Positions 1,142 through 60,456 of a stretch of 64,000 nucleotides of DNA are shown here, piece after piece. The notes beneath the pieces are model-generated. The model had not been told where the DNA came from. It made no database searches and saw only the letters and a program-made list of their open reading frames with translations. Positions within the stretch are counted from its first letter, which is position 1; each line of letters opens with the position of its first letter. Location: the IMG/VR virus record IMGVR_UViG_3300025030_000041, positions 62,001 through 126,000 of that record; one strand, 5' to 3'. The translations under genes were made by a program, and so were the position numbers.

Positions 1142-1429
1142 ATGTTAGAAAACGAAAACTTGAATGAACCACAAAAAACGCAATTGAATATAAGTGAGGT
1201 TAGCCACAATTGTATTTGTTGCGGAAAAGAAATAAAGAAACTTGATGGACTGCCAAAAGATAAGGATTGGGAAGGTATGTGGAATGGTGGAATAGTTGAA
1301 AAGATAAGTGCTGGGTATGGCAGTTTACTTGATGGAGATATGTATGTTTTGGCTATATGCGATGACTGTGTAAAGTTGAAACAGCTAAAATACGTTGGTA
1401 ACTATATGTTCCCAGACAATTGTGACTAA
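1142..1429 (+). CDS. hypothetical cassette protein (CxxC pairs)
   Basis: Likely start ATG 1142 inside ORF 1022..1429; stop TAA is part of a TAAC site. Confidence 0.65.
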   Translation: MLENENLNEPQKTQLNISEVSHNCICCGKEIKKLDGLPKDKDWEGMWNGGIVEKISAGYGSLLDGDMYVLAICDDCVKLKQLKYVGNYMFPDNCD

Positions 1430-1571
1430 CTGATGACACTAACAGTCAGGTGGGGATTAAATGCACCGTACTTTCACTTGACGATAAGCTTCATTAGACA
1501 CAAGATAGCTTCAATGTGACACAAGCCCCCACTTGCTGTTATTGTATGTTATGGAGCGTTTATTGCCATCA
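1199..1571 (+). mobile_element. solo integron-like cassette array A (degraded)
   Basis: GTTAGCCACAATTGT 1199 / ACAATTGTGACTAAC ending 1430; hairpin TAAC1427-N5-arm...arm-N2-GTTA1548. Confidence 0.7.
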
Positions 1572-4570: not shown

Positions 4571-4714
4571 AATTAGTTGAAGATTATGACCGTTTATCGT
4601 TTAGTATATTAATTATCAATTAATTATATTTAATTGATATATTTAGTTCAAAAATAAAGTACCTAAAAAATTTAATATATCAAAAATATTTCTTATTTTT
4701 GTATTAAATATAAC
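4571..4714 (+). repeat. promoter cassette copy 1
   Basis: ttatcaattaattatattt...tttagttcaaaaataaagtac...ttcttATTTTTGtattaaatataac; matches the other copies. Confidence 0.85.
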
Positions 4715-4776
4715 ATGGGCATAAAAGAAATGCCGAAATTAGAAGTACAAATTATCAATTTAAAACAAAAGTAAAT

Positions 4777-5043
4777 ATGAAAAACAAAACATCAATTTTA
4801 GTAGGAGCTCGGCATTTCTTTTATGCCTTATTAGTAGCTGTTATTTTTTGCGGTTGTGGAAACGGTGAAAATTCAGTGAATGGAGAAATAGAATATAGAA
4901 CAATTGTTGTAGATAGCTGTGAGTATATTGTAAAGTATAATGGCTATCAAAGAGGGTATATGTTTTCTCACAAGGGAAATTGTAAATACTGCTACAAACG
5001 TACCCCCATTTTGGTTAGTTGCGTGAAAATATTACAAAATTAA
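4777..5043 (+). CDS. putative lipoprotein (cassette)
   Basis: Hydrophobic stretch followed by FCGC lipobox-like motif; starts inside a hairpin loop. Confidence 0.6.
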   Translation: MKNKTSILVGARHFFYALLVAVIFCGCGNGENSVNGEIEYRTIVVDSCEYIVKYNGYQRGYMFSHKGNCKYCYKRTPILVSCVKILQN

Positions 5044-5192
5044 ATTGAAACATGGATGATAAATTGGATTAAAAACTTATTTAAAAGCAGGGGAAAAACA
5101 ATTAACTAAACATGTTGTTATACACAGTATTTTGTTGGTGGGATTTGACAAATTAAAAATAAATTAGCATATTTACAAAAAAAATAAAAATT

Positions 5193-5504
5193 ATGAAAGA
5201 ATTATTTGAAAAACAATTAAACGGAACACAACCATTAACAAAAGATGTTTTAGAAAAATTACAAGTTAAAACATATTTTAATGGTGAAGAAAAACAAATT
5301 GGTGAAGTTGTATTAATGGCGATGTTAATGGGTGAAGTAATTGAAAAGGAAGGTGAATATCCAAAAGTACCATTAAAATTAATAACATTAAACGAAAGCC
5401 ATTTTAATTTATTTGAATATGATGAAAGATTTAATAGAGGTAATAAATTACCAACAATTAAATTGAAACCTTTAGTTGTGGTGGGTAAAAAATATTGCGT
5501 ATAA
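5193..5504 (+). CDS. hypothetical cassette protein
   Basis: ORF ending in TAA of TAAC. Confidence 0.65.
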   Translation: MKELFEKQLNGTQPLTKDVLEKLQVKTYFNGEEKQIGEVVLMAMLMGEVIEKEGEYPKVPLKLITLNESHFNLFEYDERFNRGNKLPTIKLKPLVVVGKKYCV

Positions 5505-5564
5505 CGTCCACAGGTATATATAGTTGCGTAAATAACATATAAAATTAATTAAAAGCGATAAAGT

Positions 5565-5798
5565 ATGAAAACAGATAAAAGTAAATTAGAAGAACAAAAG
5601 CAGCAATTGGATATACATGTTGTTAGCGGTAGTTTAACTCATATTCCTTTGTTTCAATATAATGTTGCTGTTGAATCACACGGGAATACATTAGAACTAT
5701 TGCGAATTATACAAAACGATAAAAAGGAATTAAAAGAAGAGTTAGAAGCAACATATAAAGAAATTGATAGGTTAAAGGCTAAACTAAATTACTGCTAA
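5565..5798 (+). CDS. hypothetical cassette protein, coiled coil
   Basis: QLDIHVVSGS is the translated recombination-site arm. Confidence 0.7.
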   Translation: MKTDKSKLEEQKQQLDIHVVSGSLTHIPLFQYNVAVESHGNTLELLRIIQNDKKELKEELEATYKEIDRLKAKLNYC

Positions 5799-6065: not shown

Positions 6066-6281
6066 ATTTATACTTTGTTATGTTTAACGAAGTATAGTTG
6101 TGAGAAGCGAACAATTAAACATAACGGTTGGGTGTATATGTAATGTGAGATTTGAAACACTAAACTTGAATTAACCACAAATGATGATTAGAAGTAGGAT
6201 TGTTGAATATACCACTGAACCTCACATTACATATACACCTTGTTATGTGTAGTACGGTGTTAAACTTAAATTTTAAAACTT

Positions 6282-6587: not shown

Positions 6588-6697
6588 TAAATATTATATA
6601 TATATATATACATGTATGTTTAAACTATAATAAAATCAATAGTATGAACGAAAAAATTATAAAGATTTGTAAACAAAAACTTATATATTTAACGTAA
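6588..6697 (+). pseudogene. attI-like terminal site plus putative truncated integrase start (MNEKIIKICKQKLIYLT)
   Basis: Near-identical inverted copy at 46900-47002; same layout as the site upstream of the intact integrase. Confidence 0.55.
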
Positions 6698-9668: not shown

Positions 9669-10274
9669 ATGAAACTACCTGTAAAAAAAAATGAATTAAT
9701 ACAAGAATTATCTATTGAATTTAAAAGAACAAAATCTAAATTAGTTTATAATAAACTATATAACTTAATATTACCGCAAGTTCAGTTATATATATATAAA
9801 ATAGTGAAAGACTATGACGACTCTAATGATATTTCATCAGAAGTTATGATTAAGCTTTGGCAAAAAATTGATATGTATAATGAAAATTGGAGATTTAGTA
9901 CATGGATATATAGTATAGCTAGGTATGACGCCTTACAATTTATAAATTATAAAAAAAATACAGTCACATTAACTATTTTTCATGATACCGGCTCTAAAAA
10001 AGAGTTTAATAGCTTTGAAATCTTTAATTCAGAAAAAGACTTCGAAACTTTATATAATACAGTAGTTTCAGAAATACTTAAATTAAATGGTAGAAAAAAG
10101 GAAGTTCTTATTGACAGGGAAATAAATAGAATGAAATATAAGGATATATCGGTTAAATATAATATAAATATTGATACTATTAAAACCTTAATTCGTCAAT
10201 CACGAATACAGGTTTTAGCTAAATTATCAGAGAAAAAACATATAGTAGAACTAGCAAATGAAATTTTAAAATAA
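9669..10274 (+). CDS. ECF-type sigma-70 factor
   Basis: Region 2 DISSEVMIKLWQKI...FSTWIYSIAR; region 4 MKYKDIS...TIKTLIRQSR. Confidence 0.85.
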   Translation: MKLPVKKNELIQELSIEFKRTKSKLVYNKLYNLILPQVQLYIYKIVKDYDDSNDISSEVMIKLWQKIDMYNENWRFSTWIYSIARYDALQFINYKKNTVTLTIFHDTGSKKEFNSFEIFNSEKDFETLYNTVVSEILKLNGRKKEVLIDREINRMKYKDISVKYNINIDTIKTLIRQSRIQVLAKLSEKKHIVELANEILK

Positions 10275-10815: not shown

Positions 10816-12519
10816 ATGGCAATAGATTTAAACTTACTTAAAGATCATAATACTAGACAAGATTATATTAATACTTTAACTAAAGACGAACTTAAAGCAT
10901 TAATTAATAAACTCAAACTGCAAGATAGTGCATTTAAGATTATATTAAATAGCTATTATGGTTCATCAGGTCAAAATTCCTTCGCATTTTTCAATTTAGA
11001 CATAGCGGCGTCAATAACTTTGCAAGGTCAAGATATTATTAAGTATACGGATAAGGTAATAGAACATTATTTTATTAATGAGTGGCATCTTGATAAAGAG
11101 CTTCATAAAAAATTAAGTATAGATCATTTAAAAATTAATCCTATAAAAATAACAAAAGGGCCACCTATAATATATGTTGACACGGATAGCGTCAACGAAA
11201 ATTCAATAATTTATGTAAAAAATATAGGAAAAATTAAAATTAAAGATTTTTTTAAATTATGTTATAAAATTAATAGTATTATTAAATTAAAAAATGGGAA
11301 TGAGATAATTGGTATTTCTAATTTTAGAATATTAAATTTTAATAATACCTTATATTATGCAAAACCTAAAAAACTGATTAGGCATAAAGTAAAAAAGAAA
11401 AAATGGTTATTGAGGTCTAAGTCTGGAAAATCAATAATATGCACAGAAGATCATTCACTAATTGTATTTCACGATGGAATACAATTAAAAATTAAGCCAT
11501 CTGAAATTAATACAAAAATTGATAAAATTTTAACAATTAACGAATTAGACTTAAATTTTAATTATCAATTTGAAGATATATCTGAATGTAAATGTATAGG
11601 TGAATTCGAAGATGAGTGGGTATATGATATTGAAATGGATGATGCAACTCATACGTTTATTGCTAATGATATTTTAGTTCACAATTCTGGTTATATTAAT
11701 TATGATTATATTATAAAGTCGATAGAGGGGTTTGATACATTAAAAATAAGTCCTATATTATTTGCAGCTGATATAATTAAATATAGGATGAATTCTTATT
11801 TAAATAATAAATTTGAAGAATACGCTAAGTCGTATAATGCAATAAACACCCATGATTTTAAATTAGAGCATATTAGTAATAGTGGTATTTTTATTGCAAA
11901 AAAAAATTATATATTAGATGTTGCATTTGAGGATAGACTATTACCTGAGTCGTATTTATTACCTAAGGGGTTTGATTTAGTAAAAGCGTCTTTACCAAAA
12001 TGGGCACGGGCTAAAGGTACAGAATTAATTAAGATTATTTTAAAGAATGGCGACTCTTTAAATATGGATGAGATATTAAATAAATTATTAGAATATAAAG
12101 AAGAATTTAAAGGGCTACACCCTGATGAGTTTAGTATGAATTTTAATCTACGAACATTTAAAAAATATGTCATTAAAGATGACGATCAATTAGTATTTGC
12201 AAAAGGCGCATCTATCTATCCAAGGTCCGCTGGTTATTATAACCATTTATTATATAAGCAAACTGATAATATACGCAAAAAATATAAAAAGGTAAGAACC
12301 GGAGATAAGGTTAGATTTTATAATTGTATGCCTGATGATACGTATAAGATAGATGCATTTAGTTATTTACCTGGAAAATTTCCAATTGAGTTTGCGCCTC
12401 ACGTAGATTATGATGAGCAATTTAATGTTATTATTTTAAATCCATTGAATAGGGCTCTAGAAGCTATGGATATGCCATTAATAGAAAAAAATGTAATGTA
12501 TTTTAATGATTTGTTTTAA
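10816..12519 (+). CDS. family B DNA polymerase, C-terminal subunit (split gp43-like), intein-containing
   Basis: KIILNSYYG (motif B), YVDTD/S (motif C), KKNY, KG; no exonuclease or motif A. Confidence 0.9.
   Translation: MAIDLNLLKDHNTRQDYINTLTKDELKALINKLKLQDSAFKIILNSYYGSSGQNSFAFFNLDIAASITLQGQDIIKYTDKVIEHYFINEWHLDKELHKKLSIDHLKINPIKITKGPPIIYVDTDSVNENSIIYVKNIGKIKIKDFFKLCYKINSIIKLKNGNEIIGISNFRILNFNNTLYYAKPKKLIRHKVKKKKWLLRSKSGKSIICTEDHSLIVFHDGIQLKIKPSEINTKIDKILTINELDLNFNYQFEDISECKCIGEFEDEWVYDIEMDDATHTFIANDILVHNSGYINYDYIIKSIEGFDTLKISPILFAADIIKYRMNSYLNNKFEEYAKSYNAINTHDFKLEHISNSGIFIAKKNYILDVAFEDRLLPESYLLPKGFDLVKASLPKWARAKGTELIKIILKNGDSLNMDEILNKLLEYKEEFKGLHPDEFSMNFNLRTFKKYVIKDDDQLVFAKGASIYPRSAGYYNHLLYKQTDNIRKKYKKVRTGDKVRFYNCMPDDTYKIDAFSYLPGKFPIEFAPHVDYDEQFNVIILNPLNRALEAMDMPLIEKNVMYFNDLF
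11188..11685 (+). mobile_element. mini-intein (166 aa) in DNA polymerase motif C
   Basis: Starts at S after YVDTD, block B CTEDH, block F VYDIE, ends LVHN followed by S; no endonuclease domain. Confidence 0.9.
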
Positions 12520-13169: not shown

Positions 13170-13301
13170 AGAGTATTATATTTATCATTTAGTAGATTGA
13201 TTATCAATTAATTATATTTACTTGTTATATTTAGTTCAAAAATAAAGTACTAAAAATGTTAATATATCAAAAACATTTCTTATTTTTGTATTAAATATAA
13301 C
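13170..13301 (+). repeat. promoter cassette copy 2
   Basis: agtagattgattatcaattaattatatttacttGTTAtatttagttcaaaaataa...ttatttttgtattaaataTAAC. Confidence 0.9.
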
Positions 13302-13344
13302 AGTTTGCAGGTTTATTTAGTTGCGACTTTAAAAACGAAAAATT

Positions 13345-13515
13345 ATGATAACAGAAAAACAATACTTAAAAGCGAAAAAGTTAATTGCAGACTACGAAAG
13401 CCAGCAATTGAATAAACATGTTGTTATAAGCAGTAAGCCGACCTCAAAAAAGAAGAAGGTGATTATAGATGCAGATAAATTTTCAAAGATGTGTGATGTT
13501 ATTAAACGGATATAG
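13345..13515 (+). CDS. hypothetical cassette peptide, 56 aa (not in ORF track)
   Basis: MITEKQYLKAKKLIADYESQQLNKHVVISS... Confidence 0.65.
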   Translation: MITEKQYLKAKKLIADYESQQLNKHVVISSKPTSKKKKVIIDADKFSKMCDVIKRI

Positions 13516-13587
13516 GCTTATTGCTGCTAACGTTCATCAGATATATTCAGTTCTGATTTTAATATATAACTAAAATAAATTAATAAG

Positions 13588-13845
13588 ATGAAAGATAGAA
13601 AACATATAAAAACATTTGAAGATAAGACATCAGAATTGAATATATCTGATGTTATAAGTAGTAAAACTAAGGAAGAAATTCTAAAATTGATAAAAAGTTT
13701 AGATGATAGAGGGTATTTTTATATTTTCAATAATAGAGAGGATTTTGTAGAGGGTAGAACAGATTGGGATGATTTAAAAGATACTTGTGAAAACTTTTAT
13801 TATGTTATTGAAAATATAAAAGAATTAATAGAAAGAAATGAGTAG
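13588..13845 (+). CDS. hypothetical cassette protein with KHIKTFED leader
   Basis: ELNISDVISS is the translated site. Confidence 0.7.
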   Translation: MKDRKHIKTFEDKTSELNISDVISSKTKEEILKLIKSLDDRGYFYIFNNREDFVEGRTDWDDLKDTCENFYYVIENIKELIERNE

Positions 13846-13925
13846 TTTTATTACTTATAACGTGCCGCAGCTTGACGCTGTTGGCGATTTGAAACACGAA
13901 TTTTAATTAAACAACAAAAGTAAAT

Positions 13926-14270
13926 ATGGAAACGAAAACTTCAATTAACAACGAAACCGCCAATAGCGTTCAAGGTACTGTTAGGCGTAGGGCGGACATC
14001 AATCAGGAGATTGCCGAAAAATGGGAATTAATCGCTCAAATCAAAACAGAAATAGTTGCCTTGAAAAAAGAGGAACTTCTATTGTGTGATGACCACCAAA
14101 GATTTGAGGAAACGGAAGAAGAAATAACAATTTCAAGGCGACCAAAGAAAACCGAAAAGCGATTAATTGGGCGTATTCATTGGAAGGAAGAATTTAAGGA
14201 TGAAGATACAGAGCAATCTATTTGGATTGAGCGTTCACAGGTTGTTCGCGTCAATGGTGTGTGGCAGTAG
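13926..14270 (+). CDS. hypothetical cassette protein
   Basis: ORF; more GC-rich than the backbone. Confidence 0.75.
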   Translation: METKTSINNETANSVQGTVRRRADINQEIAEKWELIAQIKTEIVALKKEELLLCDDHQRFEETEEEITISRRPKKTEKRLIGRIHWKEEFKDEDTEQSIWIERSQVVRVNGVWQ

Positions 14271-14382
14271 CCTTACGCCTAACGTTTTGCGTATATGTGA
14301 AGTACGCATAGCAGAAACTTGAAATTAAATACAAACCTTAATGGCGTATTTCACATATACGCTGTTAGCAAATCGTAAAATT

Positions 14383-14559
14383 ATGACTAAGAAAGATATT
14401 TTAAAATTAGTAGAAGAAACATTCAGCGAAGAAATTTCAACTTCTTGTGCTGAAACTGTATTAGGACTTGAAAGTTGGATTGATGGTAAAGAAGAATTTA
14501 TGGAAAAGTTAGCAGAGAAGTTGAAATTGTTATTTGATGATAACGACTTATCTAAATAA
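14383..14559 (+). CDS. hypothetical cassette protein
   Basis: Start at 14383 or 14341. Confidence 0.6.
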   Translation: MTKKDILKLVEETFSEEISTSCAETVLGLESWIDGKEEFMEKLAEKLKLLFDDNDLSK

Positions 14560-14571
14560 TTTTATGTTTGC

Positions 14572-14731
14572 TAACGTTCTGTAAATATGATTAGTTGAAG
14601 AGTACTGTCATTTATAATTTAGTAGATTGATTATCAATTAATTATATTTACTTATTATATTTAGTTCAAAAATAAAGTACTAAACGTGTTAATATATCAA
14701 AAATATTTCTTATTTTTGTATTAAATATAAC
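14572..14731 (+). repeat. complete promoter-only cassette (copy 3)
   Basis: TAAC-gttct-GTAAATATGATTAGTTGA...TCAATTAATTATATTTAC-tt-ATTA-body-TAAC; no ORF. Confidence 0.9.
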
Positions 14732-14757
14732 GGCTACAGATAAACTCAGTTTTTATT

Positions 14758-14979
14758 ATGGAAAAGAAAATATATTACGAAAACAATTGGTTAAATCAGC
14801 ACTTAAATAAAGTTGGATTGCTCGATAAAAAATTGAGTTTATCTGATGTTATGTGTTGTGTTTGTGGGTCGGAACTCACAATTCAAGAGAATGAAGAAAA
14901 TCTAACTTATGATGTTAGAGAACGAATATGTGATAAATGTAATAGTGAGTTGAGCGAGGAAAGAAAACATTGCATATAA
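14758..14979 (+). CDS. hypothetical zinc-ribbon cassette protein
   Basis: CCVC...CDKC; stop is part of TAAC. Confidence 0.7.
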   Translation: MEKKIYYENNWLNQHLNKVGLLDKKLSLSDVMCCVCGSELTIQENEENLTYDVRERICDKCNSELSEERKHCI

Positions 14980-14997
14980 CGGCATCCGCTATGAGTA

Positions 14998-15291
14998 GTG
15001 GCGGATTTAGAACTACTCACTTTAAATTTAGCACAAATGACAATAGAAAGCACAGAACATCAAGAAAGCACTAACCCGCCATTACTTATATCGAGTGTTA
15101 GCGGTAGTGTTTTTCGTCCGAAGAATGGACACGAATTACTGCAAGCATTGAAAGAAAATAAACAATGTGAGATAGTAGATACACACGCATTTTTAGCAAC
15201 AAAAGCACTTGAAGACAACCATTGCGGATTTTCATTTTCTTTCAAGCTGTCAAAGTGGAATAAAGGATGGTCAGGTTTCGAGTGGTCTTAA
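14998..15291 (+). CDS. hypothetical cassette protein (integrase-proximal)
   Basis: LLISSVSGS translated site; start may be ATG 15037. Confidence 0.65.
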   Translation: MADLELLTLNLAQMTIESTEHQESTNPPLLISSVSGSVFRPKNGHELLQALKENKQCEIVDTHAFLATKALEDNHCGFSFSFKLSKWNKGWSGFEWS

Positions 15292-15300
15292 CATTACCGC

Positions 15301-15320
15301 TAACTATTATATATATACAA
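15301..15320 (+). other. attI-like terminal recombination site (TAAC-TAT-(TA)5)
   Basis: Last TAAC has no partner hairpin and lies 37 bp before the integrase ATG. Confidence 0.6.
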
Positions 15321-15340
15321 GTACGCTTAATATATTGAAT

Positions 15341-16156
15341 ATGAATACTAAATTTGATTGTATTATCAGAAAATTTGAAAAAACTCTGATAATAAAAAAT
15401 TATTCAACATGTACTATTAATAATTATAAAAGTTGTCTTTATAACTTTTTAATAGAAATAAACAATGATCCATACCATTTAAATTTAGAACAGTTAAACA
15501 ACTATTTATTTAATTTTAATTATTCGTCAGTATCACAGCAAAATCAAATACTTAATTCTTTAAAAATATTCTATTTATTAATTTTAAAAAAATCAATAAA
15601 ACATTTAATTAAAATTAAAAGACCACGAAGAGAAAAGAAATTACCACAAGTAATTTCGCATGATGAAATTGTGCAATCAATTTCCAAAATACAAAACTTA
15701 AAACATAAAGCTATCATATCGCTAGCATATAGTAGTGGATTAAGAGTTTCAGAAATATGTAATCTTAAATTAGAAGACATAGATTCAAAAAGAATGCTAA
15801 TTTTAGTTAAATCAGGAAAAGGAAGAAAAGATAGAGTTGTACCTCTTTCAAATCATATTTTAGGGCTTTTAAGAAAATACTATCTTAAATACAAACCTGA
15901 GTTTTATCTTTTTGAAAGCTATGCTCATGGAGTTAAATATTCTACTTCAAGTTGTAGGCAAATTTGGAATAATTTTAAAATTAATAAAAATTCAACTTTT
16001 CATACATTGAGGCATTCATGCTTTACAAATCTTTTAGAAAATGGAACGGACATACGAATAATTCAAAAAATAGCAGGGCATTCATCAATAAAAACTACAG
16101 AAATTTATACTCACATATCAACTAATATCTTAAATAAGATTAAATTACCAATTTAA
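15341..16156 (+). CDS. tyrosine recombinase / integrase (271 aa)
   Basis: SGLRVSE (R), GKGRKDR (K), HTLRH, GHSSIKTTEIY; N-terminal SAM-like domain; the track start 15209 overlaps a cassette, so 15341 is preferred. Confidence 0.95.
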   Translation: MNTKFDCIIRKFEKTLIIKNYSTCTINNYKSCLYNFLIEINNDPYHLNLEQLNNYLFNFNYSSVSQQNQILNSLKIFYLLILKKSIKHLIKIKRPRREKKLPQVISHDEIVQSISKIQNLKHKAIISLAYSSGLRVSEICNLKLEDIDSKRMLILVKSGKGRKDRVVPLSNHILGLLRKYYLKYKPEFYLFESYAHGVKYSTSSCRQIWNNFKINKNSTFHTLRHSCFTNLLENGTDIRIIQKIAGHSSIKTTEIYTHISTNILNKIKLPI

Positions 16157-16224: not shown

Positions 16225-16965
16225 ATGCTTACACAAGATAATATTAAATCAGTATTACTTTTTGATTTAGAAACATGTGGTCAATCTAAGGAGTTATTTG
16301 GATTACCTCCTCTTTTACAAGATATATTTATACGTAGAACTTGGCAAAAAATTAAAGAAGAGTATAAAGATGAAAACGAAGGGTATTTAAAAAATGCCGG
16401 CTTATATGCTGAATATGGTAAAATAATATGTGCGTCGTTTGCCATGATTAAGTTTGATGAAAATATTAGTAGTATTAGTCTAATTAATATAGCAGATGAA
16501 AATGAAAAGATTCTTTTAGAAAAAGTGAGTAAATTATTAAATGACTTTTCATCTATTTTTAAAAATGGTAAATTATGTGGGTATAATATTAAAAATTTTG
16601 ATATACCATTTTTATCAAAACGATTTTTAATTAATAGATTAGATTTACCAAATTTATTAGATAACTATAACAAAAAGCCATGGGAAATATCATGTTATGA
16701 TTTATTTGAAATGTGGTCATTTGGCCAAAAAAAATTAATACCATTTGAATTAGTATTAGCGTCACTAAATATTGATACCCCTAAAGATGATATTCATGGC
16801 CATGAAGTCCATGAAACATATTATTCATCAGACAATAAAATAAATTCTCTTAATAAAATATCAAAGTATTGTGGAAAAGATGTTATAGCATCTTGCCAAT
16901 TATTATTACGTTTAAATAATATCGATGTAGTTAATAAAGATAATATTATTAGTAAAACAATTTAG
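16225..16965 (+). CDS. PolB-type 3'-5' exonuclease (DnaQ-like)
   Basis: FDLET, GYNIKNFDIPF, YCGKDV. Confidence 0.85.
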   Translation: MLTQDNIKSVLLFDLETCGQSKELFGLPPLLQDIFIRRTWQKIKEEYKDENEGYLKNAGLYAEYGKIICASFAMIKFDENISSISLINIADENEKILLEKVSKLLNDFSSIFKNGKLCGYNIKNFDIPFLSKRFLINRLDLPNLLDNYNKKPWEISCYDLFEMWSFGQKKLIPFELVLASLNIDTPKDDIHGHEVHETYYSSDNKINSLNKISKYCGKDVIASCQLLLRLNNIDVVNKDNIISKTI

Positions 16966-19861: not shown

Positions 19862-21613
19862 CTATCTTTTCCAAACAAAAATATAGTTACCACTATTATA
19901 ACATTCTTTATAATCCAATCCATGCATTATCTCAAACTCCGTTTTATCAATACTATAATTACTTAATTTATGCTTAACGTAAACTTGTCTATTATACCTC
20001 TTATAATTTTTAGTATAAAAATACCCAGGTCTAGACTCTCCTAAATAATCAAACCCCATATTAATATAAACATTTTCGTCAAATCTAAACGCCCAATCTC
20101 TATTAGAATACGTTAAAACCAAATTAATTTCACTATACTTATTAATAAAATAAGAAAATAACCTATTAGCTGCCCCAATAACATTAGTATTCAACTTATT
20201 ACAAAACCTATACAACTCTAAATCATATTTTTCCTTGTTTTTATTCCCATACCTAATCTTTCCAAATGTCATCAAACTAACTAACTCCTCTCCATAATAC
20301 AAACCTATATTATATTTACTCATACACTTGCCCTGCAAATGATTATCTTCTAAAAATTTATTAGACTCTTTAAACGATACTTCTCGTATCACACACTTCC
20401 TAGAATATATCCTATTAGGAGTTTTATTTAAAAGGTTAAGTATACGTGATTTAATAATATTTTTTCTATATAACCAATCATCTTCCCATATATGAACTAG
20501 ATGGACCTTTTGTTTTATACAATTAACGGTTTTATTTAAATGATAATTTTTATTTTTTAGTATTACATTATTATGTGCATAAAAACTATTATATTCAAAT
20601 GCTAAGTTTAATTCAGGTATATAAATATCTAATTCCTTTGGTGAAATAACAGTTCTATTATTTTGAATAACATTAAAGTCAGTATTATTTTTAATAAATT
20701 CATAAATTTCAGTTTGACAAATACTTGAGCTTAATGGATTACAATTTAAGCATGGAGTTTCTATTTTATATTTTTCTACTCTTTGCTGTAAAAGATTATT
20801 ATTAATAATATATTCAGTATTACATTTATCACATAGTATAGTTATATCTCTATCATAATCTACATTAATAATATTTAAGTTTGGATATTGCGCTAGTATT
20901 CGTTTTCTAGTTTTTTCTAGTTTTTTCTTTTTAATTTCTTCTCTATTTATCTTAAGAGATTCTATTCCAGCTAATCTAACTTCAGGAACTTGAAATGGAT
21001 GAAAATATTTTCCATTAGTTTTTTCTATAAATGTCTTTCTCTTTTTTTCTTTTAGTTTAATACTACTATCAGTTCCTTTTCCATAATTTTTTGAAAAAGT
21101 ATTTGATGCTTTTTCTTTAACCCAACTAATTTGTTTAATATTGTCTACACCATACTTATCTCTAATTGTATCTTTTCTTTTTAAATACGCAGTATTTCCT
21201 TTCGCTAATGGGTTATCCTCTCCTTTTAAATGCTTATGATTTCCAGAAATATGATTCTTAATATACTTTTCTTTCTTTTTAAGTTTAACGTCTAAATCAT
21301 TATTAATACATTTCATACTACAATATACTGAATATCCTAATGACAACCCTCTAAATTTAGGGAAATTAATCTTACAACACTTACATATAGGTACACAGTT
21401 CAATTCATAAATATAATGATAAATCTGTTGTGTAAATGATAGATCTATCAAATCATTTAATTTACTATTCTCTTCTATTAAATTAAATAAATCAGGATTA
21501 TTATTATTTAACTTTTTTCTGACACACTTCCACCCTGATTTATTATCAGTCATAAAATATTCTAATACTTCAGTTTTCATTTTTCCATTCAAATTTATAA
21601 TTTCCACAATCAT
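19862..21613 (-). CDS. putative homing endonuclease (Hef/Vsr-like PD-(D/E)XK) paralog 1
   Basis: KYGVDN repeats, ELDIYIPELNLAFEYN, HIWEDDW, C-terminal NHLQG...ELYRFC domain. Confidence 0.7.
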   Translation of the reverse strand: MIVEIINLNGKMKTEVLEYFMTDNKSGWKCVRKKLNNNNPDLFNLIEENSKLNDLIDLSFTQQIYHYIYELNCVPICKCCKINFPKFRGLSLGYSVYCSMKCINNDLDVKLKKKEKYIKNHISGNHKHLKGEDNPLAKGNTAYLKRKDTIRDKYGVDNIKQISWVKEKASNTFSKNYGKGTDSSIKLKEKKRKTFIEKTNGKYFHPFQVPEVRLAGIESLKINREEIKKKKLEKTRKRILAQYPNLNIINVDYDRDITILCDKCNTEYIINNNLLQQRVEKYKIETPCLNCNPLSSSICQTEIYEFIKNNTDFNVIQNNRTVISPKELDIYIPELNLAFEYNSFYAHNNVILKNKNYHLNKTVNCIKQKVHLVHIWEDDWLYRKNIIKSRILNLLNKTPNRIYSRKCVIREVSFKESNKFLEDNHLQGKCMSKYNIGLYYGEELVSLMTFGKIRYGNKNKEKYDLELYRFCNKLNTNVIGAANRLFSYFINKYSEINLVLTYSNRDWAFRFDENVYINMGFDYLGESRPGYFYTKNYKRYNRQVYVKHKLSNYSIDKTEFEIMHGLDYKECYNSGNYIFVWKR

Positions 21614-23324
21614 ACACTCTATAAATATTCCGGCTTAGCATTATCTCATGCCCTGTCATATTCTTATCGTATCCTTCTCTTACTAATACATCCTTCCTAA
21701 AATTAAACCTATGCCTCCTTACTCCATCTATAACATACCAATAATTAGGTCCACTTGTACTAGCATACCTAAATCCTAACTTAATATATAAATTATCATC
21801 CTTATAATTTGTCCAACCCTGGTCGGCATAACTTATAATTTTATATGGATTATATGTTTCTATAAAATATTTAAATAGTTTAGAGGCCGCTCCTACTACA
21901 CTAGTATTTAACTTATTGCAAAACCTCAATAACTCATACTCGTCAATCTTATTTTTACTGCCTAATGACTTCCTCAATTTACCAAATGTCATCAAACTTA
22001 CTAACTCCTCCCTGTTATACAAACCTATATTGTATTTACTTACGCACTTTCCCTGCAAATGATTATCTTCTAAAAACTGATTAGACTCTTTAAACGACAC
22101 TTCTCTAACCCCGCACTTCCTAGAATATATCCGATTAGGAGTCTTATTTAAAAGGTTAAGAATTCGTGATTTAATAATATCTTGCTTAAATACCCAGTTA
22201 TCCTCAAATATGTGAATTAAGGTTATACCAGTTTTATTACACTCAAACGTTTTATTTAAATGATAATTATTGCCTTTAAATAACTCATTATGCCAATATA
22301 CTCCATTAAATTCAAATGCTAATTTATAATCAGGTAAATATGCATCTAATTCATTATATTTAAAATTTTTTAAAACTTTTTTATTCTCATATACATATTC
22401 ATTAGACTTAACATTATCTTTTATAAAATTTAATAACTCTTTTTCAGCAATAGAACATTTTTTAAAAATAGGAGGATTACCCTTGCGACATGGGGAAGTT
22501 TTAAATTTAATACATCTATTAAATGGTCCAACTAAAATATCAAAAATTGAATTACAACTATTACAACTTACAGTATAGGATTTCATATTATACTCTATGA
22601 TGATATTAATATTTAAAAAATCGTTAGATATTTTCTTTTTTATATTTAAAGCGTTTAAACTTTTAGTTTTACCACTCCTTTTACCTATATCTTTAAATTG
22701 TGATACATTTTTTACATTATATTTTTTTAAATTAGTTTGTTTAGTTTTTTCTTTAATAATACTACTAGCTAATCCTACTCCATTATATAATCTCATGTGC
22801 GTATCAAGAGCTTTCTGTTTTATTTCATTAGACTGTAAAGGAGATTCTACACCATATAAATTGAGCGTCGTATTCTTATATGTTTCTCTTACTTTAGGAT
22901 TAGACCAATTATGATAATACCCAGTTTTTTCAAAACACTTCTGCTTAAATTTATTTTTAGCATCATTATTTTTTAAAAAATGGTCTTCACCATATTTTTT
23001 TTTACACGTATTTTTAAAAGAATCATTCTTAGATTTTATCTTACATTCTTTATTTCCACATGTTTTATGATAATACCCTGTAAATAATAATGGATTATTA
23101 CAATAATTGCACCTTTTAATTTCTTTTATATCATATATTAAACTATGTATTCTTTGAGTTATTGAAGCGCTTATTAAATCTAAATAGGAAGTCTCAATAA
23201 CTATAATTTTATTAAAACTCTCACGATTCTTTGCTAAAAGAACTAATGAACTATACCTTATATTAGATGACTCCTTTATATGTTTAATTTCATTAAACAA
23301 AAATTCTCTATTGTATACTTTCAT
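21570..23324 (-). CDS. putative homing endonuclease (Hef/Vsr-like PD-(D/E)XK) paralog 2
   Basis: KKYG repeats, ELDAYLPDYKLAFEFNGVYWH, same C-terminal domain. Confidence 0.7.
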   Translation of the reverse strand: MKVYNREFLFNEIKHIKESSNIRYSSLVLLAKNRESFNKIIVIETSYLDLISASITQRIHSLIYDIKEIKRCNYCNNPLLFTGYYHKTCGNKECKIKSKNDSFKNTCKKKYGEDHFLKNNDAKNKFKQKCFEKTGYYHNWSNPKVRETYKNTTLNLYGVESPLQSNEIKQKALDTHMRLYNGVGLASSIIKEKTKQTNLKKYNVKNVSQFKDIGKRSGKTKSLNALNIKKKISNDFLNINIIIEYNMKSYTVSCNSCNSIFDILVGPFNRCIKFKTSPCRKGNPPIFKKCSIAEKELLNFIKDNVKSNEYVYENKKVLKNFKYNELDAYLPDYKLAFEFNGVYWHNELFKGNNYHLNKTFECNKTGITLIHIFEDNWVFKQDIIKSRILNLLNKTPNRIYSRKCGVREVSFKESNQFLEDNHLQGKCVSKYNIGLYNREELVSLMTFGKLRKSLGSKNKIDEYELLRFCNKLNTSVVGAASKLFKYFIETYNPYKIISYADQGWTNYKDDNLYIKLGFRYASTSGPNYWYVIDGVRRHRFNFRKDVLVREGYDKNMTGHEIMLSRNIYRVYDCGNYKFEWKNEN

Positions 23325-27199: not shown

Positions 27200-27721
27200 T
27201 TAAACATAAACTTTTCCTTTTACATCAATTACTTTTCTTACTTCTCTTACTGTAAATTTTTTAGTATTATTCTCAATATTAAAGTATTCTCCTACCGCTG
27301 TAGGAGCTCCTTCAAGACTAGTTAAATAATTATCAGAACAATCAAAATCACCACCTACTATTTTTGGACTTCCTTCTAAACTAGTTAAATTATTATTATA
27401 ATAACAACAACCAAAAAAACCAGTTACTTCTTCTAGGTTTAGCTCTTTCAAATTATTTATTTCTTTTAGTCTAACATTACCAATTATAACTTTAATATTC
27501 TTAAAGTCTTGTATATTATTTTTAGTTATAATAATCGTTTTATCGAAGGGTTTAGCTACGAATATTTGTTCTTTGGTATAACCTTTATTGAGGTAAGGAA
27601 GTAATAAATCATCCCACCGTTCTTTAAGTCGTCTAGGTATAAATATATCTTTAGCACTAAGCTTAGACTTATTAGATTCTTCTTCAGATATAAATTGTTC
27701 AAATAGCTTTATATGCTTCAT
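27200..27721 (-). CDS. LRR-like (LTSLEG) paralog with MKHIKLFEQF leader
   Basis: 22-aa repeats; paralog family. Confidence 0.85.
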   Translation of the reverse strand: MKHIKLFEQFISEEESNKSKLSAKDIFIPRRLKERWDDLLLPYLNKGYTKEQIFVAKPFDKTIIITKNNIQDFKNIKVIIGNVRLKEINNLKELNLEEVTGFFGCCYYNNNLTSLEGSPKIVGGDFDCSDNYLTSLEGAPTAVGEYFNIENNTKKFTVREVRKVIDVKGKVYV

Positions 27722-27724
27722 TAT

Positions 27725-28348
27725 TTAAAATAGCATTTTATAAGTTTCTACAAAATTTATAGTAGAGCTAAATGATGGTTTGATTTTTTGAATTATATTA
27801 GAGTCTGGTTCTAAATCTTTGCCATTAATTCTAAAAGAAGTAGTAGTAGGTTTAGCGTTACTGATTATAGTAATATCTTCTTTTAGATCAGCTTCAAATA
27901 TAAAATCGTCATAATTATACTCAGTAACTATTTTAAGACGTAATTCTAAAGTTGGTAATACTCTTAATATATCACCAATTAATTCCATTTTTGAATATTT
28001 TTCCTTTGGTATGCCTAAGTCATCAAAAAATTCAGTTTCTTCAGTTTTTATTATAAAGTCAAGAGGAATTAACATTAAGTCATTATAATTAATAGTAGGT
28101 TCATTAATTGATAATAAACCTATTTTTGCTCCTTTTATTTCTTTATTAACTCCAGATTTTATATCAAATGTAGAATAATAATATTTCTCTTCAATATGAT
28201 TAATTTTACCTCCTAAAACCTTAAGCTTTTTAATACACGCCGTAGTAGTTGAAAAATTTATTTTAATATCTTCTTCAGAATGCTGCTTAATTTCATTAAT
28301 CTTATAATTATTCTTTATTTTATATTCACAGAAATTATCAAATATCAT
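27725..28348 (-). CDS. hypothetical protein
   Basis: ORF. Confidence 0.7.
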   Translation of the reverse strand: MIFDNFCEYKIKNNYKINEIKQHSEEDIKINFSTTTACIKKLKVLGGKINHIEEKYYYSTFDIKSGVNKEIKGAKIGLLSINEPTINYNDLMLIPLDFIIKTEETEFFDDLGIPKEKYSKMELIGDILRVLPTLELRLKIVTEYNYDDFIFEADLKEDITIISNAKPTTTSFRINGKDLEPDSNIIQKIKPSFSSTINFVETYKMLF

Positions 28349-28365
28349 TTTCGTGTATTTTATTT

Positions 28366-29001
28366 TTAAACATAAACTTTTCCCTTTACATCAACTACTT
28401 TTCTTACTTCTTCTTCTATAAATTTTTTAGTATTATTCTCAATATTAAAATATTCTCCTACCGTGGTAGGAGCTCCTTCAAGACTAGTTAAATTATTATT
28501 AGAACAACTAAAATAGCCGTTTACCGTGGTAGGAGCTCCTTCAAGACTAGTTAACTTATTATTATAACAATAAAAATTTCCACTTACTATAGTAGGAGCC
28601 CCTTTAAGACTAGTTAACTTATTATAAGAACAATCAAAAAATCCACTTACTATAGTAGGAGCCCCTTTAAGACTAGTTAACTTATTATAAGAACAATCAA
28701 AATATCCAACTACTTCTTCTATACCTAATACTCTCAAATCATTTATTCCACTTATTCCAACATTACCTATTATTACTTTAATATTCTTAAAATCTTCTAT
28801 ATTATCTATAGTTATAATAATCGTTTTATCAATTGGTTTAGCAATAAATATTTGTTCTTTGGTATAGCCTTTATTTAGGTAAGGAAGTAACAGGTCATCC
28901 CAACGTTCTTTAAGTCTTCTAGGTATAAATATATCTTTAGTGCTAAGCTTAGGAGTTTCTTCTTCAGATATAAATTGTTCAAACAGTTTTATATGTTTCA
29001 T
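28366..29001 (-). CDS. LRR-like paralog with 4 repeats
   Basis: 66-nt near-identical tandem repeats at about 28450-28710. Confidence 0.85.
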   Translation of the reverse strand: MKHIKLFEQFISEEETPKLSTKDIFIPRRLKERWDDLLLPYLNKGYTKEQIFIAKPIDKTIIITIDNIEDFKNIKVIIGNVGISGINDLRVLGIEEVVGYFDCSYNKLTSLKGAPTIVSGFFDCSYNKLTSLKGAPTIVSGNFYCYNNKLTSLEGAPTTVNGYFSCSNNNLTSLEGAPTTVGEYFNIENNTKKFIEEEVRKVVDVKGKVYV

Positions 29002-29363
29002 TATTCTTCAGTTTTAGGTTCAATTTCAGTAGAAGTTTCTTCTGGTTTAATGTCTTCGCTAGGGGTTTCTAATAATTTTTTTTCTAGGTATTCTTTTTGA
29101 GTTTCATAGAATTGTTTAATAGTCGGCCAAGTTAGTGTTACTTCTTTATATAATTCTTCCATTTTTGGTCTAATACTTTTAATATCTGAATTATCATTTA
29201 ATAATACATCTAGTAGAACTGTACGAAATTTAGTTAAACCATTATATGCAGTATCAAAATCTTTTTCATCTAATGTTAGAGATTCTGGATCTTTTTTAAT
29301 ATCAGTAGCCTCATTAAGAATTCCATTTTTAAATTCTTCGTAAAGTTTAAATTTTTTATTCAT
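29001..29363 (-). CDS. hypothetical protein (KLYEEF leader)
   Basis: ORF. Confidence 0.7.
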   Translation of the reverse strand: MNKKFKLYEEFKNGILNEATDIKKDPESLTLDEKDFDTAYNGLTKFRTVLLDVLLNDNSDIKSIRPKMEELYKEVTLTWPTIKQFYETQKEYLEKKLLETPSEDIKPEETSTEIEPKTEE

Positions 29364-29392
29364 GATAAAGTATTTTATTTTTATTTATTTAT

Positions 29393-29944
29393 TTAATCTA
29401 TTGCAACTTTTAAATTAAAATCAAAATAATTAAATGTTGCATCAAATGTATTAAAAGTTGGAGTATTACTGCTATATGATAATTTTAGGCTTGACATTCC
29501 TTTTAATATAACTTTATTATATTCAATTTGGCTAATCGCTTTACCTTCACTATTTAACATTAATACTATAAATGGTGGAAAAACATCAAGCTCAGTATTA
29601 TTAAAATCTAAATAATTTAATGCATTTTCAAGCATAATGAAATAATTTAAAAAAGCGTCCGTTAATTTAAAAGTTAATGTAAATTCTCTAGTAAATAAGT
29701 CTTGAATAGGTTTACTATTTTTCATTTCACGAGTCTTTCCTAATAGTAAAGTTTGAGAAGATGTTGTCATTGACCATCCTGGAAAATCAATTTGTTGTAC
29801 TGTACTTGACATAAAATCAGATATTGTATCATAAGGTAATATTAAACTCTTATAATAATCTTTATATTTATTTTCAATTTCAGAATTAAAAAATTCTTTT
29901 GGAAATTGAAATACAAAACTACTTTGTCTATTATTTAATATCAT
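29393..29944 (-). CDS. putative tail tube-like / virion protein
   Basis: QQIDFPGWS...FTLTFKL...LSYSS...FDATFNY pattern; structural context. Confidence 0.5.
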   Translation of the reverse strand: MILNNRQSSFVFQFPKEFFNSEIENKYKDYYKSLILPYDTISDFMSSTVQQIDFPGWSMTTSSQTLLLGKTREMKNSKPIQDLFTREFTLTFKLTDAFLNYFIMLENALNYLDFNNTELDVFPPFIVLMLNSEGKAISQIEYNKVILKGMSSLKLSYSSNTPTFNTFDATFNYFDFNLKVAID

Positions 29945-29947
29945 TTA

Positions 29948-30484: not shown

Positions 30485-30500
30485 TTACTTATATATTTTT

Positions 30501-31010: not shown

Positions 31011-31011
31011 T

Positions 31012-32691: not shown

Positions 32692-32706
32692 TAATATTAT
32701 TTATTT

Positions 32707-33285: not shown

Positions 33286-33311
33286 TATTTTTATTTATTT
33301 TTATTTAAAAT

Positions 33312-33338
33312 AAAAAAGGCTGATGTAAATCAGCCTTT
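33312..33338 (-). terminator. intrinsic terminator
   Basis: aaaggctgat/atcagccttt hairpin with A run on + strand. Confidence 0.7.
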
Positions 33339-33361
33339 ATATAAACAAAAATAGTTTTTTG

Positions 33362-34016: not shown

Positions 34017-34060
<44 letters not shown>

Positions 34061-48526: not shown

Positions 48527-48643
48527 GTTATATTTAATACAAAAATAATAAAAAGTTTTGATATATTATAGAGCTTAGTACTTTATTTTTGTATTAAATA
48601 TAACGAGTAAATATAATTAATTGATAATCAATCTACTAAATTA
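48527..48643 (-). repeat. promoter cassette copy 4 (perfect 22-bp terminal IR)
   Basis: gttatatttaatacaaaaataa / ttatttttgtattaaatataac. Confidence 0.9.
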
Positions 48644-48688
48644 TTAAATTTATTGAGTATATAGTTTTAAATAAATAAATAACATAAT

Positions 48689-56966: not shown

Positions 56967-56981
56967 ACTTGTAATTTTTAA

Positions 56982-57022
56982 ATTTAATACAAAAATAAGA
57001 AAAAGTTTTGATATATTAAAAC
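56982..57022 (-). promoter_or_regulatory. half copy of the promoter cassette
   Basis: atttaatacaaaaataagaaaaagttttgatatattaa. Confidence 0.7.
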
Positions 57023-57036
57023 TTTAAAATCCTATC

Positions 57037-60196: not shown

Positions 60197-60267
60197 ATCA
60201 ATTCAAATTTATTGTTAATGTGTTATTGAAATTATTAAATTTAAGTTATGAAGCTAAACCTTTACGA

Positions 60268-60390
60268 AATATTTAATATAAAAATAAGAAATAGTTTTGA
60301 TATATTAAAATATTTAGTACTTTATTTTTAAACTAAATATAACGAGTTAATATAATTAATTGATAATCAATCTATTAAATGATAAATACT
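60268..60390 (-). repeat. promoter cassette copy 5 (diverged)
   Basis: tagtactttatttttaaactaaatataacgagttaatataattaattgataatcaatcta. Confidence 0.85.
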
Positions 60391-60456
60391 TACTCATTTA
60401 AATAGTTCTTAAATTAGACTACTATAAACTTTATCATTTTTGTTTGTGCTTTATAA

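What the first reader, a model, noticed from the sequence alone, without database searches (positions are those of the whole stretch)
14572..14731. Promoter-only cassette repeated through the window and heading arrays
SEEN: a ~160-bp ORF-less unit has full cassette anatomy (16/18-bp hairpin arms plus a GTTA/ATTA...TAAC body). Copies: 4571-4714, 13170-13301, 14572-14731 (mid-array, complete), inverted 48527-48643 and 60268-60390, half copy 56982-57022. Each lies directly upstream of co-oriented small ORFs. The body ends contain TATTTTTG on both strands (perfect 22-bp IR in the 48527 copy; the 60268 copy has drifted). KNOWN: TAnnTTTG is the Bacteroidota primary-sigma -7 element; classical integrons use a fixed Pc near attI. 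INFERENCE: expression is supplied by a mobile, possibly bidirectional promoter cassette whose insertion point determines which cargo is expressed.
Basis: partly seen in the sequence, partly recalled or inferred. Interest (0 to 1): 0.85.

Follow-up and report, generated by a model that had tools for sequence, protein, structure and literature searches.

The report
Repeated promoter module in jumbo phage
A 246-kb phage that probably infects Bacteroidota carries at least 15 near-identical copies of a 120-160-bp gene-less unit that looks like a host-type promoter, and this unit and small-gene modules have been copied between gene arrays at a shared short junction motif, much like the "mobile regulatory cassettes" known from T4-like phages.

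Summary
The window has five full copies and one half copy of a 120-160-bp ORF-less repeat at the stated coordinates; chance expectation is zero. At least nine more copies lie elsewhere in the same 246-kb phage contig. No copy was found in any other genome searched.

All copies are intergenic, and 13 of 15 point at a co-oriented ORF. Similarity ends abruptly at ...ATATAAC. Truncated copies keep only the 3' 43-75 nt. That core holds a perfect Bacteroidota -7 box (TATTTTTG), which puts the predicted start 9 nt before the end of similarity. Translation signals also look Bacteroidota-like (1 of 84 ORFs has an SD; A-rich at -14 to -11).

The best reading is a repeated, probably early, host-sigma promoter module. 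The "cassette" idea is partly right. A 162-nt promoter unit and a 237-nt ORF module recur at 99% identity in different arrays, with breakpoints at a TAAC motif. Each small ORF is preceded by a roughly 125-nt TAAC...GTTA hairpin leader with strong covariation. Two Xer-like recombinases flank arrays.

Integron membership fails on several defining features. The closest known system is the PeSL cassettes of T4-like phages. No transcription start or mobility was shown.

The parts
14572..14731 (+). Promoter unit c3, long form. Sub-parts: 5' extension 14572-14609 (starts at TAAC|GTTCTG); 5' module 14618-14650 with palindrome 14627-14637; left arm of inverted repeat 14654-14675; invariant box AATATATCAAAA 14691-14702; -7 box TATTTTTG 14711-14718; right arm 14710-14731; predicted start about 14723.
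   Evidence: 99.4% identical over 162 nt to contig 159791-159952 with unrelated flanks
4586..4714 (+). Promoter unit c1 (-7 box 4694-4701, predicted start about 4706), 62 nt upstream of ORF 4777-5043
13180..13301 (+). Promoter unit c2, short form (-7 box 13281-13288, predicted start about 13293), 43 nt upstream of the 56-aa ORF 13345-13515
48527..48646 (-). Promoter unit c4 in a divergent intergenic region. The core promoter arm occurs on both strands (48527-48548 on -, 48583-48604 on +) as a perfect 24-nt inverted repeat. The + arm faces ORF 48689-49384.
60266..60393 (-). Promoter unit c5, drifted: both -7-like boxes read TATTTTTA and the end reads TATTTC
56977..57025 (-). Half copy c6: only the core (invariant box plus -7 box plus start region), 15 nt upstream of ORF 56727-56966
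4705..4841 (+). Structured leader element (TAAC, 19-bp stem, 72-nt loop holding ATG 4777, then ATTAG) directly fused to unit c1
13292..13434 (+). Leader element fused to unit c2. It is part of the 237-nt module 13296-13532 that is present three times in the genome at 99% identity.
14722..14859 (+). Leader element fused to unit c3 (stem 14737-14754 with 14828-14845, ATG 14758 in the loop, GTTAT after the stem)
13522..15108 (+). Further leader elements inside array 1 that have no promoter unit in front: 13522-13662, 13852-13991, 14274-14375, 14971-15108. More lie upstream at 1421-1559, 4990-5128, 5496-5633 and 6116-6253.
   Evidence: covariance model R1, E 1e-5 to 1e-25
15341..16156 (+). Xer-like tyrosine recombinase at the downstream end of array 1. 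A 51%-identical paralogue follows array 3 elsewhere in the contig.
9669..10274 (+). Phage-encoded sigma-70-family protein (regions 2 and 4), a possible alternative reader of the repeated promoter

Best explanation
The unit is a repeated transcription-initiation module of a large, distantly T4-like phage whose host is probably a Bacteroidota bacterium. Its 3' 43 nt form the core promoter: an invariant A/T-rich box at about -32 to -21, a perfect primary-sigma -7 element TATTTTTG at -12 to -5, and a start at the first A of AAATATAAC. The upstream 80-115 nt hold a mirrored copy of the core and a palindrome, and they look like accessory or regulatory DNA that some copies have lost. Transcripts would begin exactly at the 5' edge of a conserved structured leader (TAAC ... 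long stem ... GTTA) that holds the start codon of the first small ORF in its loop. In this way the unit switches on runs of small ORFan genes, most likely early in infection. Copies, and ORF-plus-leader modules, have spread between at least five gene arrays by recombination whose breakpoints fall at the shared TAAC motif. This gives a cassette-like, PeSL-like architecture. Shown: the repeat, its anatomy, orientation, truncation pattern, module duplications with their junctions, and the leader structure. Inferred: promoter activity, the sigma factor used, the early timing, and the recombination mechanism.
For: Repeat and copy number. There are at least 15 copies, all in one 246-kb contig that was assembled identically in two samples. 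Orientation: 13 of 15 copies face a co-oriented ORF. Similarity among copies stops within 1-2 nt after ATATAAC, and downstream sequences are unrelated. The truncated or degenerate copies (56977-57025, contig 235520-235594, contig 46540-46642) keep the 3' core and lose the upstream arm or 5' module. A 43-nt weight matrix scores the six window copies above 53 bits and nothing else above 12 bits. The -7 box fits TAHHTTTG with G at -5, as defined by transcript mapping in Flavobacterium johnsoniae, where the -33 element is weak (PMC6847099). The start predicted from this lies 1 nt inside the first position of the leader covariance model. Host type: 1 of 84 ORFs has an SD-like motif, and A is enriched at -14 to -11 and at -3. 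The closest capsid relatives include Prevotella Lak phages and Tenacibaculum phages. In the 48527 copy the mirror arm has become identical to the core exactly where a divergent gene exists. Modularity: the 162-nt unit and the 237-nt ORF module recur at 99% identity in different contexts. Eight of 14 repeat boundaries fall at TAAC against 3.4% expected, P about 4e-9. PeSL precedent: PMC2839356 and PMC4122927.
Against: No transcription start data exist. TAnnTTTG is common in this 25% GC DNA (119 sites in the window) and is not enriched in the sense orientation overall. There is no -33 TTTG at the canonical spacing on the sense strand. Two copies have A instead of the near-invariant G of the -7 box. 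One long copy (contig 180197-180358) has no co-oriented ORF downstream. The 90-99% identity over 120-160 nt is more than a promoter needs, so the upstream part must have another role or reflect recent copying. The host is inferred, not known.
Confidence: 0.55

Rival explanations
1. Integron-like system. The TAAC...GTTA hairpins are attC-like single-strand recombination sites, the two Xer-like tyrosine recombinases move modules between arrays, and the unit is a true ORF-less mobile promoter cassette.
For: The hairpin elements end in YTAAC and GTTA(G/T), the same core letters as integron RYYYAAC/GTTRRRY. They are 105-125 nt long, conserved in structure but variable in sequence, and have an asymmetric internal loop next to the core. 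Module boundaries fall at TAAC. Two paralogous recombinases each sit right after an array. The long unit begins GTT and ends AAC, and its 5' half scores weakly as a hairpin element.
Against: The recombinases are XerA-like. The integron-integrase models score below cut-off, and the alignment to IntI4 breaks where the IntI-specific insertion lies; the proteins are 267-271 aa against 320 aa. Breakpoints are at the 5' TAAC, not at G|TT of the 3' core. ORF start codons lie inside the loops. The conserved stem mismatch is G opposite T on the sense strand (9 of 11), which favours a sense-strand RNA fold; integrons use the bottom strand. The recombinases are co-oriented and lie at the downstream end, with no attI or Pc. 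Short-form units have 5' ends that are not at TAAC.
Confidence: 0.13
2. The unit is a promoter, but it is read by the phage-encoded sigma factor (window 9669-10274) or needs a phage activator bound to the invariant box at about -30, as at a T4 MotA box. That would make it a middle or late promoter, not an early one.
For: A sigma-70-family protein with regions 2 and 4 is encoded in the window. The block at -32 to -21 is invariant while the canonical -33 position is the most variable part of the unit. The copies form a discrete class with no graded weaker sites.
Against: The -7 box matches the host consensus perfectly. The genes served are small ORFans and replication genes, which are typical early or middle cargo. 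A different repeated TATA-rich box right after TAAC (6595, 15305, 46993) is a better candidate for the phage sigma.
Confidence: 0.17
3. The unit is not primarily a sense promoter. It could be a protein-binding operator or insulator, a terminator-like hairpin for upstream transcripts, or an antisense promoter that makes a short RNA across the conserved 5' module.
For: There is a 22-nt inverted repeat with 91% of positions paired, and folding z-scores reach -5.6. The antisense strand has TTTG, 23 nt, then TATTTTTG (reading). The 5' module is highly conserved without an obvious promoter role.
Against: Covariation in the inverted repeat is not significant: 53-87 of 500 shuffles reach the observed values. 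Truncated copies lose the left arm and the 5' module but keep the sense core. Antisense folding has z = 0.2. Changes in the 5' hairpin break pairs. No U-tract follows the hairpin.
Confidence: 0.1
4. A selfish miniature repeat (MITE-like) with no role in expression.
For: Many near-identical copies are confined to one genome. The unit contains inverted-repeat arms. One copy has no downstream gene.
Against: The inverted repeat does not bound the conserved unit, and no target-site duplications are seen. Orientation is strictly tied to gene direction. Truncations are always from the 5' side and preserve the -7 core.
Confidence: 0.05

Closest known systems
PeSL (promoter-early stem-loop) mobile regulatory cassettes of T4-like phages (Arbiol et al. 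2010, PMC2839356; Comeau et al. 2014, PMC4122927)
   Same: Both are repeated intergenic units of about 100 bp in the variable, ORFan-rich regions of a T4-type genome. Both combine a host-type early promoter with an inverted repeat that can overlap the promoter boxes. Degraded half copies occur in both. Both are associated with insertion, duplication and replacement of small ORF modules. The PeSL authors themselves compared PeSL-plus-ORFan units to integron cassettes.
   Different: Here the promoter is of the Bacteroidota -7 type, not sigma-70 -35/-10. Copies are far more alike (87-99% over 120-160 nt). The stem is A/T-rich and is not followed by a terminator-like tract. Breakpoints fall at a 4-5-nt TAAC motif shared with a separate structured leader family, rather than inside the promoter unit. 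An ORF-less unit behaves as a module of its own. Two Xer-like recombinases lie next to the arrays. Mini-circles and promoter or terminator activity were shown for PeSLs but not here.
Integron gene cassettes and attC sites
   Same: Both have arrays of small co-oriented ORFs separated by structured sites of about 60-140 nt whose ends read ...YTAAC and GTTA.... Structure is conserved while sequence varies, and a tyrosine recombinase gene is adjacent.
   Different: There is no IntI-specific insertion and no attI or Pc. The recombinase is co-oriented and downstream. Breakpoints are at the 5' core. ORF starts lie inside the loops. The sense strand folds better because of a conserved G.U. The promoter sits on a repeated unit instead of at one fixed Pc.
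Bacteroidota primary-sigma promoters (TTTG / TAnnTTTG; refined to TAHHTTTG in F. johnsoniae, PMC6847099)
   Same: TATTTTTG fits the -7 consensus at all six near-invariant positions, the upstream DNA is A/T-rich, and the predicted start is an A 5 nt after the G.
   Different: There is no -33 TTTG at 19-21 bp. An invariant 12-nt box occupies -32 to -21 instead. No experimental start is available.

Membership tests
PeSL regulatory cassette | Repeated intergenic motif in the variable ORFan regions of a T4-type phage genome | tested here: met
   T4-like capsid, prohead protease, baseplate wedge and clamp loader are present. Copies lie between small ORFs of unknown function.
PeSL regulatory cassette | Strong sigma-70-like -35/-10 early promoter | tested here: not met
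   No sense-strand sigma-70 consensus is present. The sigma-70 scan finds as many sites as shuffles do, 168 against 166. A Bacteroidota -7 box takes its place.
PeSL regulatory cassette | Stem-loop next to or overlapping the promoter | tested here: met
   A 22-nt inverted repeat has its right arm containing the -7 box, with 91% of positions paired across 13 copies.
PeSL regulatory cassette | Recombination between copies gives indels between close relatives and mini-circles | tested here: inconclusive
   No close relative carries the unit. Paralogous arrays do show module exchange, but with junctions at TAAC. Contigs from other samples that join different arrays may be assembly chimeras.
PeSL regulatory cassette | Measured promoter and terminator activity | not testable with these tools
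   This needs reporter fusions in a suitable host.
Integron | IntI-type integrase with the extra domain near patch III | tested here: not met
   TIGR02249 scores 169.8 against a cut-off of 265, in two stretches. The best model is XerA. The PDB match to IntI4 (2a3v) breaks at residue 179, and the best hits are XerA 4a8e and 5hxy.
Integron | attC: imperfect inverted repeat of 57-141 bp bounded by RYYYAAC and GTTRRRY | tested here: inconclusive
   The elements are bounded by YTAAC and GTTA(G/T) and are 105-125 nt long. Only some fit the full 7-nt consensus. The stem is 16-22 bp with a 36-87-nt loop.
Integron | Cassette boundary at G|TT of the 3' core, with the ORF upstream of its attC | tested here: not met
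   Duplicated modules begin right after TAAC. Start codons lie inside the loops.
Integron | intI divergent from the array, with attI and a fixed Pc | tested here: not met
   Both recombinase genes are co-oriented and lie at the downstream end of their arrays.
Bacteroidota primary-sigma promoter | -7 element TAnnTTTG (TAHHTTTG) | tested here: met
   TATTTTTG is present in 11 of 13 aligned copies and in the half copy. Two copies have A in place of G.
Bacteroidota primary-sigma promoter | -33 TTTG 19-21 bp upstream | tested here: not met
   Positions -37 to -33 are the most variable part of the unit. This element is weak in F. johnsoniae.
Bacteroidota primary-sigma promoter | Mapped transcription start about 5 nt after the G | not testable with these tools
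   No transcript data are available.
MITE / small transposable element | Terminal inverted repeats that bound the element, plus target-site duplication | tested here: not met
   Another 45-80 conserved nt lie outside the left arm, and no duplicated flank is seen.

The most novel reading that the evidence does not exclude
The TAAC...GTTA hairpin elements are recombination sites of a phage-borne, integron-like gene-shuffling system run by the two Xer-like recombinases. In that system promoters themselves travel as ORF-less cassettes, so expression of early cargo genes is rewired by cassette order.
Probability: 0.12. Interest if true: 0.9.

Novelty: new variant of a known kind. Interest (0 to 1): 0.6.

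Why it matters
Promoters of phages that infect Bacteroidota are almost unmapped. A 43-nt core kept in 15 copies is a ready candidate for a strong, portable phage promoter for this phylum. The architecture extends the PeSL idea beyond Proteobacteria phages: regulatory units that double as points of modular exchange. It adds two features that were not part of the PeSL description. One is a structured leader, supported by covariation, that holds each ORF's start codon in a loop. The other is a short shared junction motif next to tyrosine recombinase genes. If the junctions prove to be site-specific, this would be a new way for large phages to shuffle and re-wire accessory genes.

Tried and rejected
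- blastn and megablast of window pieces against INPHARED phages found no match.
- Single-protein searches of IMG/VR with the capsid and clamp-loader proteins returned only the same phage.
- A pattern scan of 241 million metagenome records and of GTDB genomes gave 117 and 8 stretches. nhmmer showed that only those from the same contig carry the unit, so the rest are chance 27-mers.
- Relatives with 66-70% identical clamp loaders (L146-L149) lack the unit and show no comparable repeat in about 17 kb each.
- The sigma-70 promoter and terminator scan was uninformative in this AT-rich DNA.
- TAnnTTTG is not generally enriched in the sense orientation.
- The 11-mer TGCTAACGTTC with mismatches was not above chance. 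The signal only appeared when TAACG was combined with the hairpin that follows it.
- Covariation in the unit's own inverted repeat was not significant.
- Rfam gave no match, even at E up to 1 around the arrays.
- PHROG, Pfam and NCBIfam gave no function for the ORFs downstream of the units.
- Contigs from other samples that join different arrays across the 237-nt module (L156, L158), and one that runs into MazE/PIN genes (L157), were not used as evidence. Short-read assemblers can create such joins at repeats.
- I considered small invertible-promoter switches of the Bacteroides type and rejected them, because the segment between the arms is only about 34 bp.

Full report
**What the window is.**
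- The window is 25% GC, densely coded, and has no tRNA genes.
- It encodes a T4-type major capsid protein, prohead protease, baseplate wedge protein and clamp loader. It also encodes a DnaJ-like protein, a family-B DNA polymerase piece with an intein, and a tyrosine recombinase.
- It is positions 62001-126000 of a 246,115-bp contig (IMGVR_UViG_3300025030_000041 = Ga0209518_1000025). The same sequence was assembled in a second sample.
- No cultured phage is close. The best capsid matches are an uncultured huge phage (38%), Prevotella Lak phages (33%) and Tenacibaculum phages (about 30%).
- Only 1 of 84 ORFs has an SD-like motif. A is enriched at -14 to -11 and at -3. This is the pattern described for Bacteroidota (PMC6847099). 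A Bacteroidota host is therefore likely but not proven.

**The observation.**
- The six copies are real and lie at the stated places.
- Two internal motifs of 23-25 nt match 5 and 7 times, against 0.00-0.01 expected. nhmmer E-values are 1e-27 to 1e-32.
- Pattern scans plus nhmmer found nine more copies in other parts of the same contig, giving at least 15 in the 120 kb I could hold.
- No copy was found in any other viral contig, metagenome record or GTDB genome. Phages whose clamp loader is 66-70% identical also lack it.

**Anatomy of the unit.** Reading in gene sense:
- The long form has a 38-nt extension that begins right after a TAAC.
- Next comes a 33-nt module with the palindrome TTGATTATCAA.
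- Next comes a 22-nt left arm, then a 34-nt spacer that holds the invariant box AATATATCAAAA between two variable patches.
- Last comes a 22-nt right arm, TTATTTTTGTATTAAATATAAC.
- Similarity among copies stops within a base or two after that final AAC.
- Copies form a nested set that shares the 3' end. There are four long forms of about 160 nt, seven forms of 115-130 nt, one of 75 nt, one of 44 nt, and one that has lost half of the left arm. What always survives is the last 43 nt.
- A weight matrix of those 43 nt scores the six window copies at 53-61 bits. Nothing else in the window exceeds 12 bits, and the best of 20 shuffles reached 7.4 bits.

**Why a promoter.**
- The right arm contains TATTTTTG. 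This fits the Bacteroidota primary-sigma -7 element at all six near-invariant positions.
- In F. johnsoniae the G is at -5 and the -33 element is weak.
- That places the start at the first A of AAATATAAC, 9 nt before similarity ends. For c3 this is about 14723.
- Thirteen of 15 copies face a co-oriented ORF, usually within 70 nt.
- In the one window copy that sits between divergent genes (48527-48646), the left arm has become identical to the right arm. The result is a perfect 24-nt inverted repeat that also points a core at ORF 48689-49384.
- The genes served are small ORFans and, further down, replication genes, which suits an early class.

**Weak points of the promoter reading.**
- No transcript data exist.
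- TAnnTTTG is frequent in this DNA and is not sense-enriched overall.
- Two copies have A in place of the G.
- One long copy has nothing co-oriented downstream.
- The phage has its own sigma-70-family protein at 9669-10274.

**The inverted repeat of the unit.** It is real: 91% of positions pair, against about 48% in slid controls. Its few changes do not covary significantly. Truncated copies do without the left arm. I therefore treat the upstream part as accessory, for example an operator, a weak antisense promoter or a relic of a bidirectional ancestor, and not as the essential feature.

**The cassette question.**
- TAACG followed within 14 nt by the 5' arm of a long-range inverted repeat occurs at 12 of 131 TAACG sites. 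Six control 5-mers give about 1%.
- Perfect arms of 14 nt or more with 25-120-nt gaps occur 8 times in the window, against 0.3 in shuffles.
- The 3' arm is nearly always followed by GTTA(T/G). TAAC to the end of the 3' arm is 118-120 nt in 7 of 15 cases.
- The start codon of the next small ORF lies in the loop.
- Eleven such elements align as one family. RNAalifold finds an 18-bp stem, and 15 of its pairs show compensatory changes.
- 92.9% of cells pair against 63.9% in shuffles, and 58 double-change cells are seen against 18 expected. None of 500 shuffles reaches the observed values.
- One pair is G.U in 9 of 11 members. This favours folding of the sense strand, most simply as RNA.
- A covariance model finds 11 members in the window, all on the sense strand between 1.4 and 15.1 kb. 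It also finds members directly after units c1, c2 and c3, starting 1 nt before the predicted transcription start.
- The same model weakly recognises the 5' half of the long-form promoter unit (E 0.001-0.5).
- Rfam has no such family.

**Modules have moved.**
- The 162-nt long unit (14572-14733) is 99.4% identical to contig 159791-159952, with unrelated flanks on both sides.
- A 237-nt module holding the 56-aa ORF (13296-13532) occurs three times at 99% identity in three arrays, again with different neighbours.
- Eight of 14 boundaries of such repeats lie within 3 nt of a TAAC, against 3.4% expected (P about 4e-9).
- Array 1 ends in a Xer-like recombinase (15341-16156). Array 3 ends in a 51%-identical paralogue.

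**Why it is not an integron.**
- The recombinases are XerA-like and lack the IntI insertion.
- Breakpoints are at the 5' TAAC, not at G|TT.
- ORF starts lie inside the loops.
- The recombinase genes are co-oriented and downstream.
- Short-form units do not start at TAAC.

T4-type recombination needs only short patches of identity, and it was proposed to move PeSL-plus-ORFan units between PeSLs (PMC2839356). The same process acting on a family of homologous leaders would give the pattern seen here. I therefore file the element as a PeSL-like regulatory cassette of a Bacteroidota-type phage. I keep the site-specific reading as the main novel alternative.

**Verdict.** The promoter reading is likely but unproven. 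Cassette-like modularity is real. The integron-like mechanism is not supported. The element is a new variant of a known kind.

Noticed in passing
window 1421-1559, 4705-4841, 4990-5128, 5496-5633, 6116-6253, 13292-13434, 13522-13662, 13852-13991, 14274-14375, 14722-14859, 14971-15108 (all +): A family of roughly 125-nt structured elements: YTAAC, a long stem of 11-23 bp, a loop that holds the next ORF's start codon, then GTTA(T/G). Covariation is very strong (58 compensatory cells against 18 expected, 0 of 500 shuffles) and one G.U pair is conserved. There is no Rfam match. The function is unknown; it could be a translation or stability leader, or a recombination site.
   Followed up: partly
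window 6595-6687(+), 46901-46993(-), 15299-15392(+), 34020-34050; contig 50987-51059 and 161145-161247: A second repeated intergenic class: a (TA)n or TATTATATATATA box, in several cases right after a TAAC, followed by about 70 conserved nt. It lies upstream of the clamp-loader gene, the recombinase gene and others. It may be a different promoter class, perhaps for the phage sigma.
   Followed up: partly
window 15341-16156(+) and L150:4239-5042: Two paralogous small Xer-like tyrosine recombinases (51% identity) in a phage that otherwise looks lytic and T4-like. Each lies immediately after an array of small ORF modules. Their nearest clusters are viral, then Bacteroidota.
   Followed up: partly
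window 9669-10274(+): A phage-encoded sigma-70-family protein of 201 aa with regions 2 and 4.
   Followed up: partly
window 13296-13532; contig 158403-158639 and 234575-234808: A 56-aa ORF with its leader is present three times at 99% identity in three different arrays. Short contigs from other samples (L156, L158) join different arrays across this module. They are either real recombinants or assembly chimeras.
   Followed up: partly
window 10816-12519(+) and 16225-16965(+): A family-B DNA polymerase fragment with an intein-like insert and a separate PolB-type exonuclease ORF lie on either side of array 1. Arbiol et al. noted PeSL-like sequences between split polymerase cistrons in Aeromonas T4-like phages.
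   Followed up: no
window 19862-21613(-) and 21570-23324(-): Two tandem paralogous proteins of about 583 aa that match PHROG families labelled homing or HNH endonuclease (E down to 1e-114). They share an 84% identical 248-nt stretch.
   Followed up: no
window 27200-33961(-): Five or more paralogous genes of 170-210 aa with internal 63-nt (21-aa) tandem repeats and conserved ends, interleaved with baseplate genes. They are probably a diversified fibre or receptor-binding family.
   Followed up: no
L007 4502-4664 (contig 180197-180358): A long-form promoter unit that ends in TATAAT instead of TATAAC. It faces convergent genes and has no ATG in the next 170 nt, so it looks like a dead-end copy.
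   Followed up: partly
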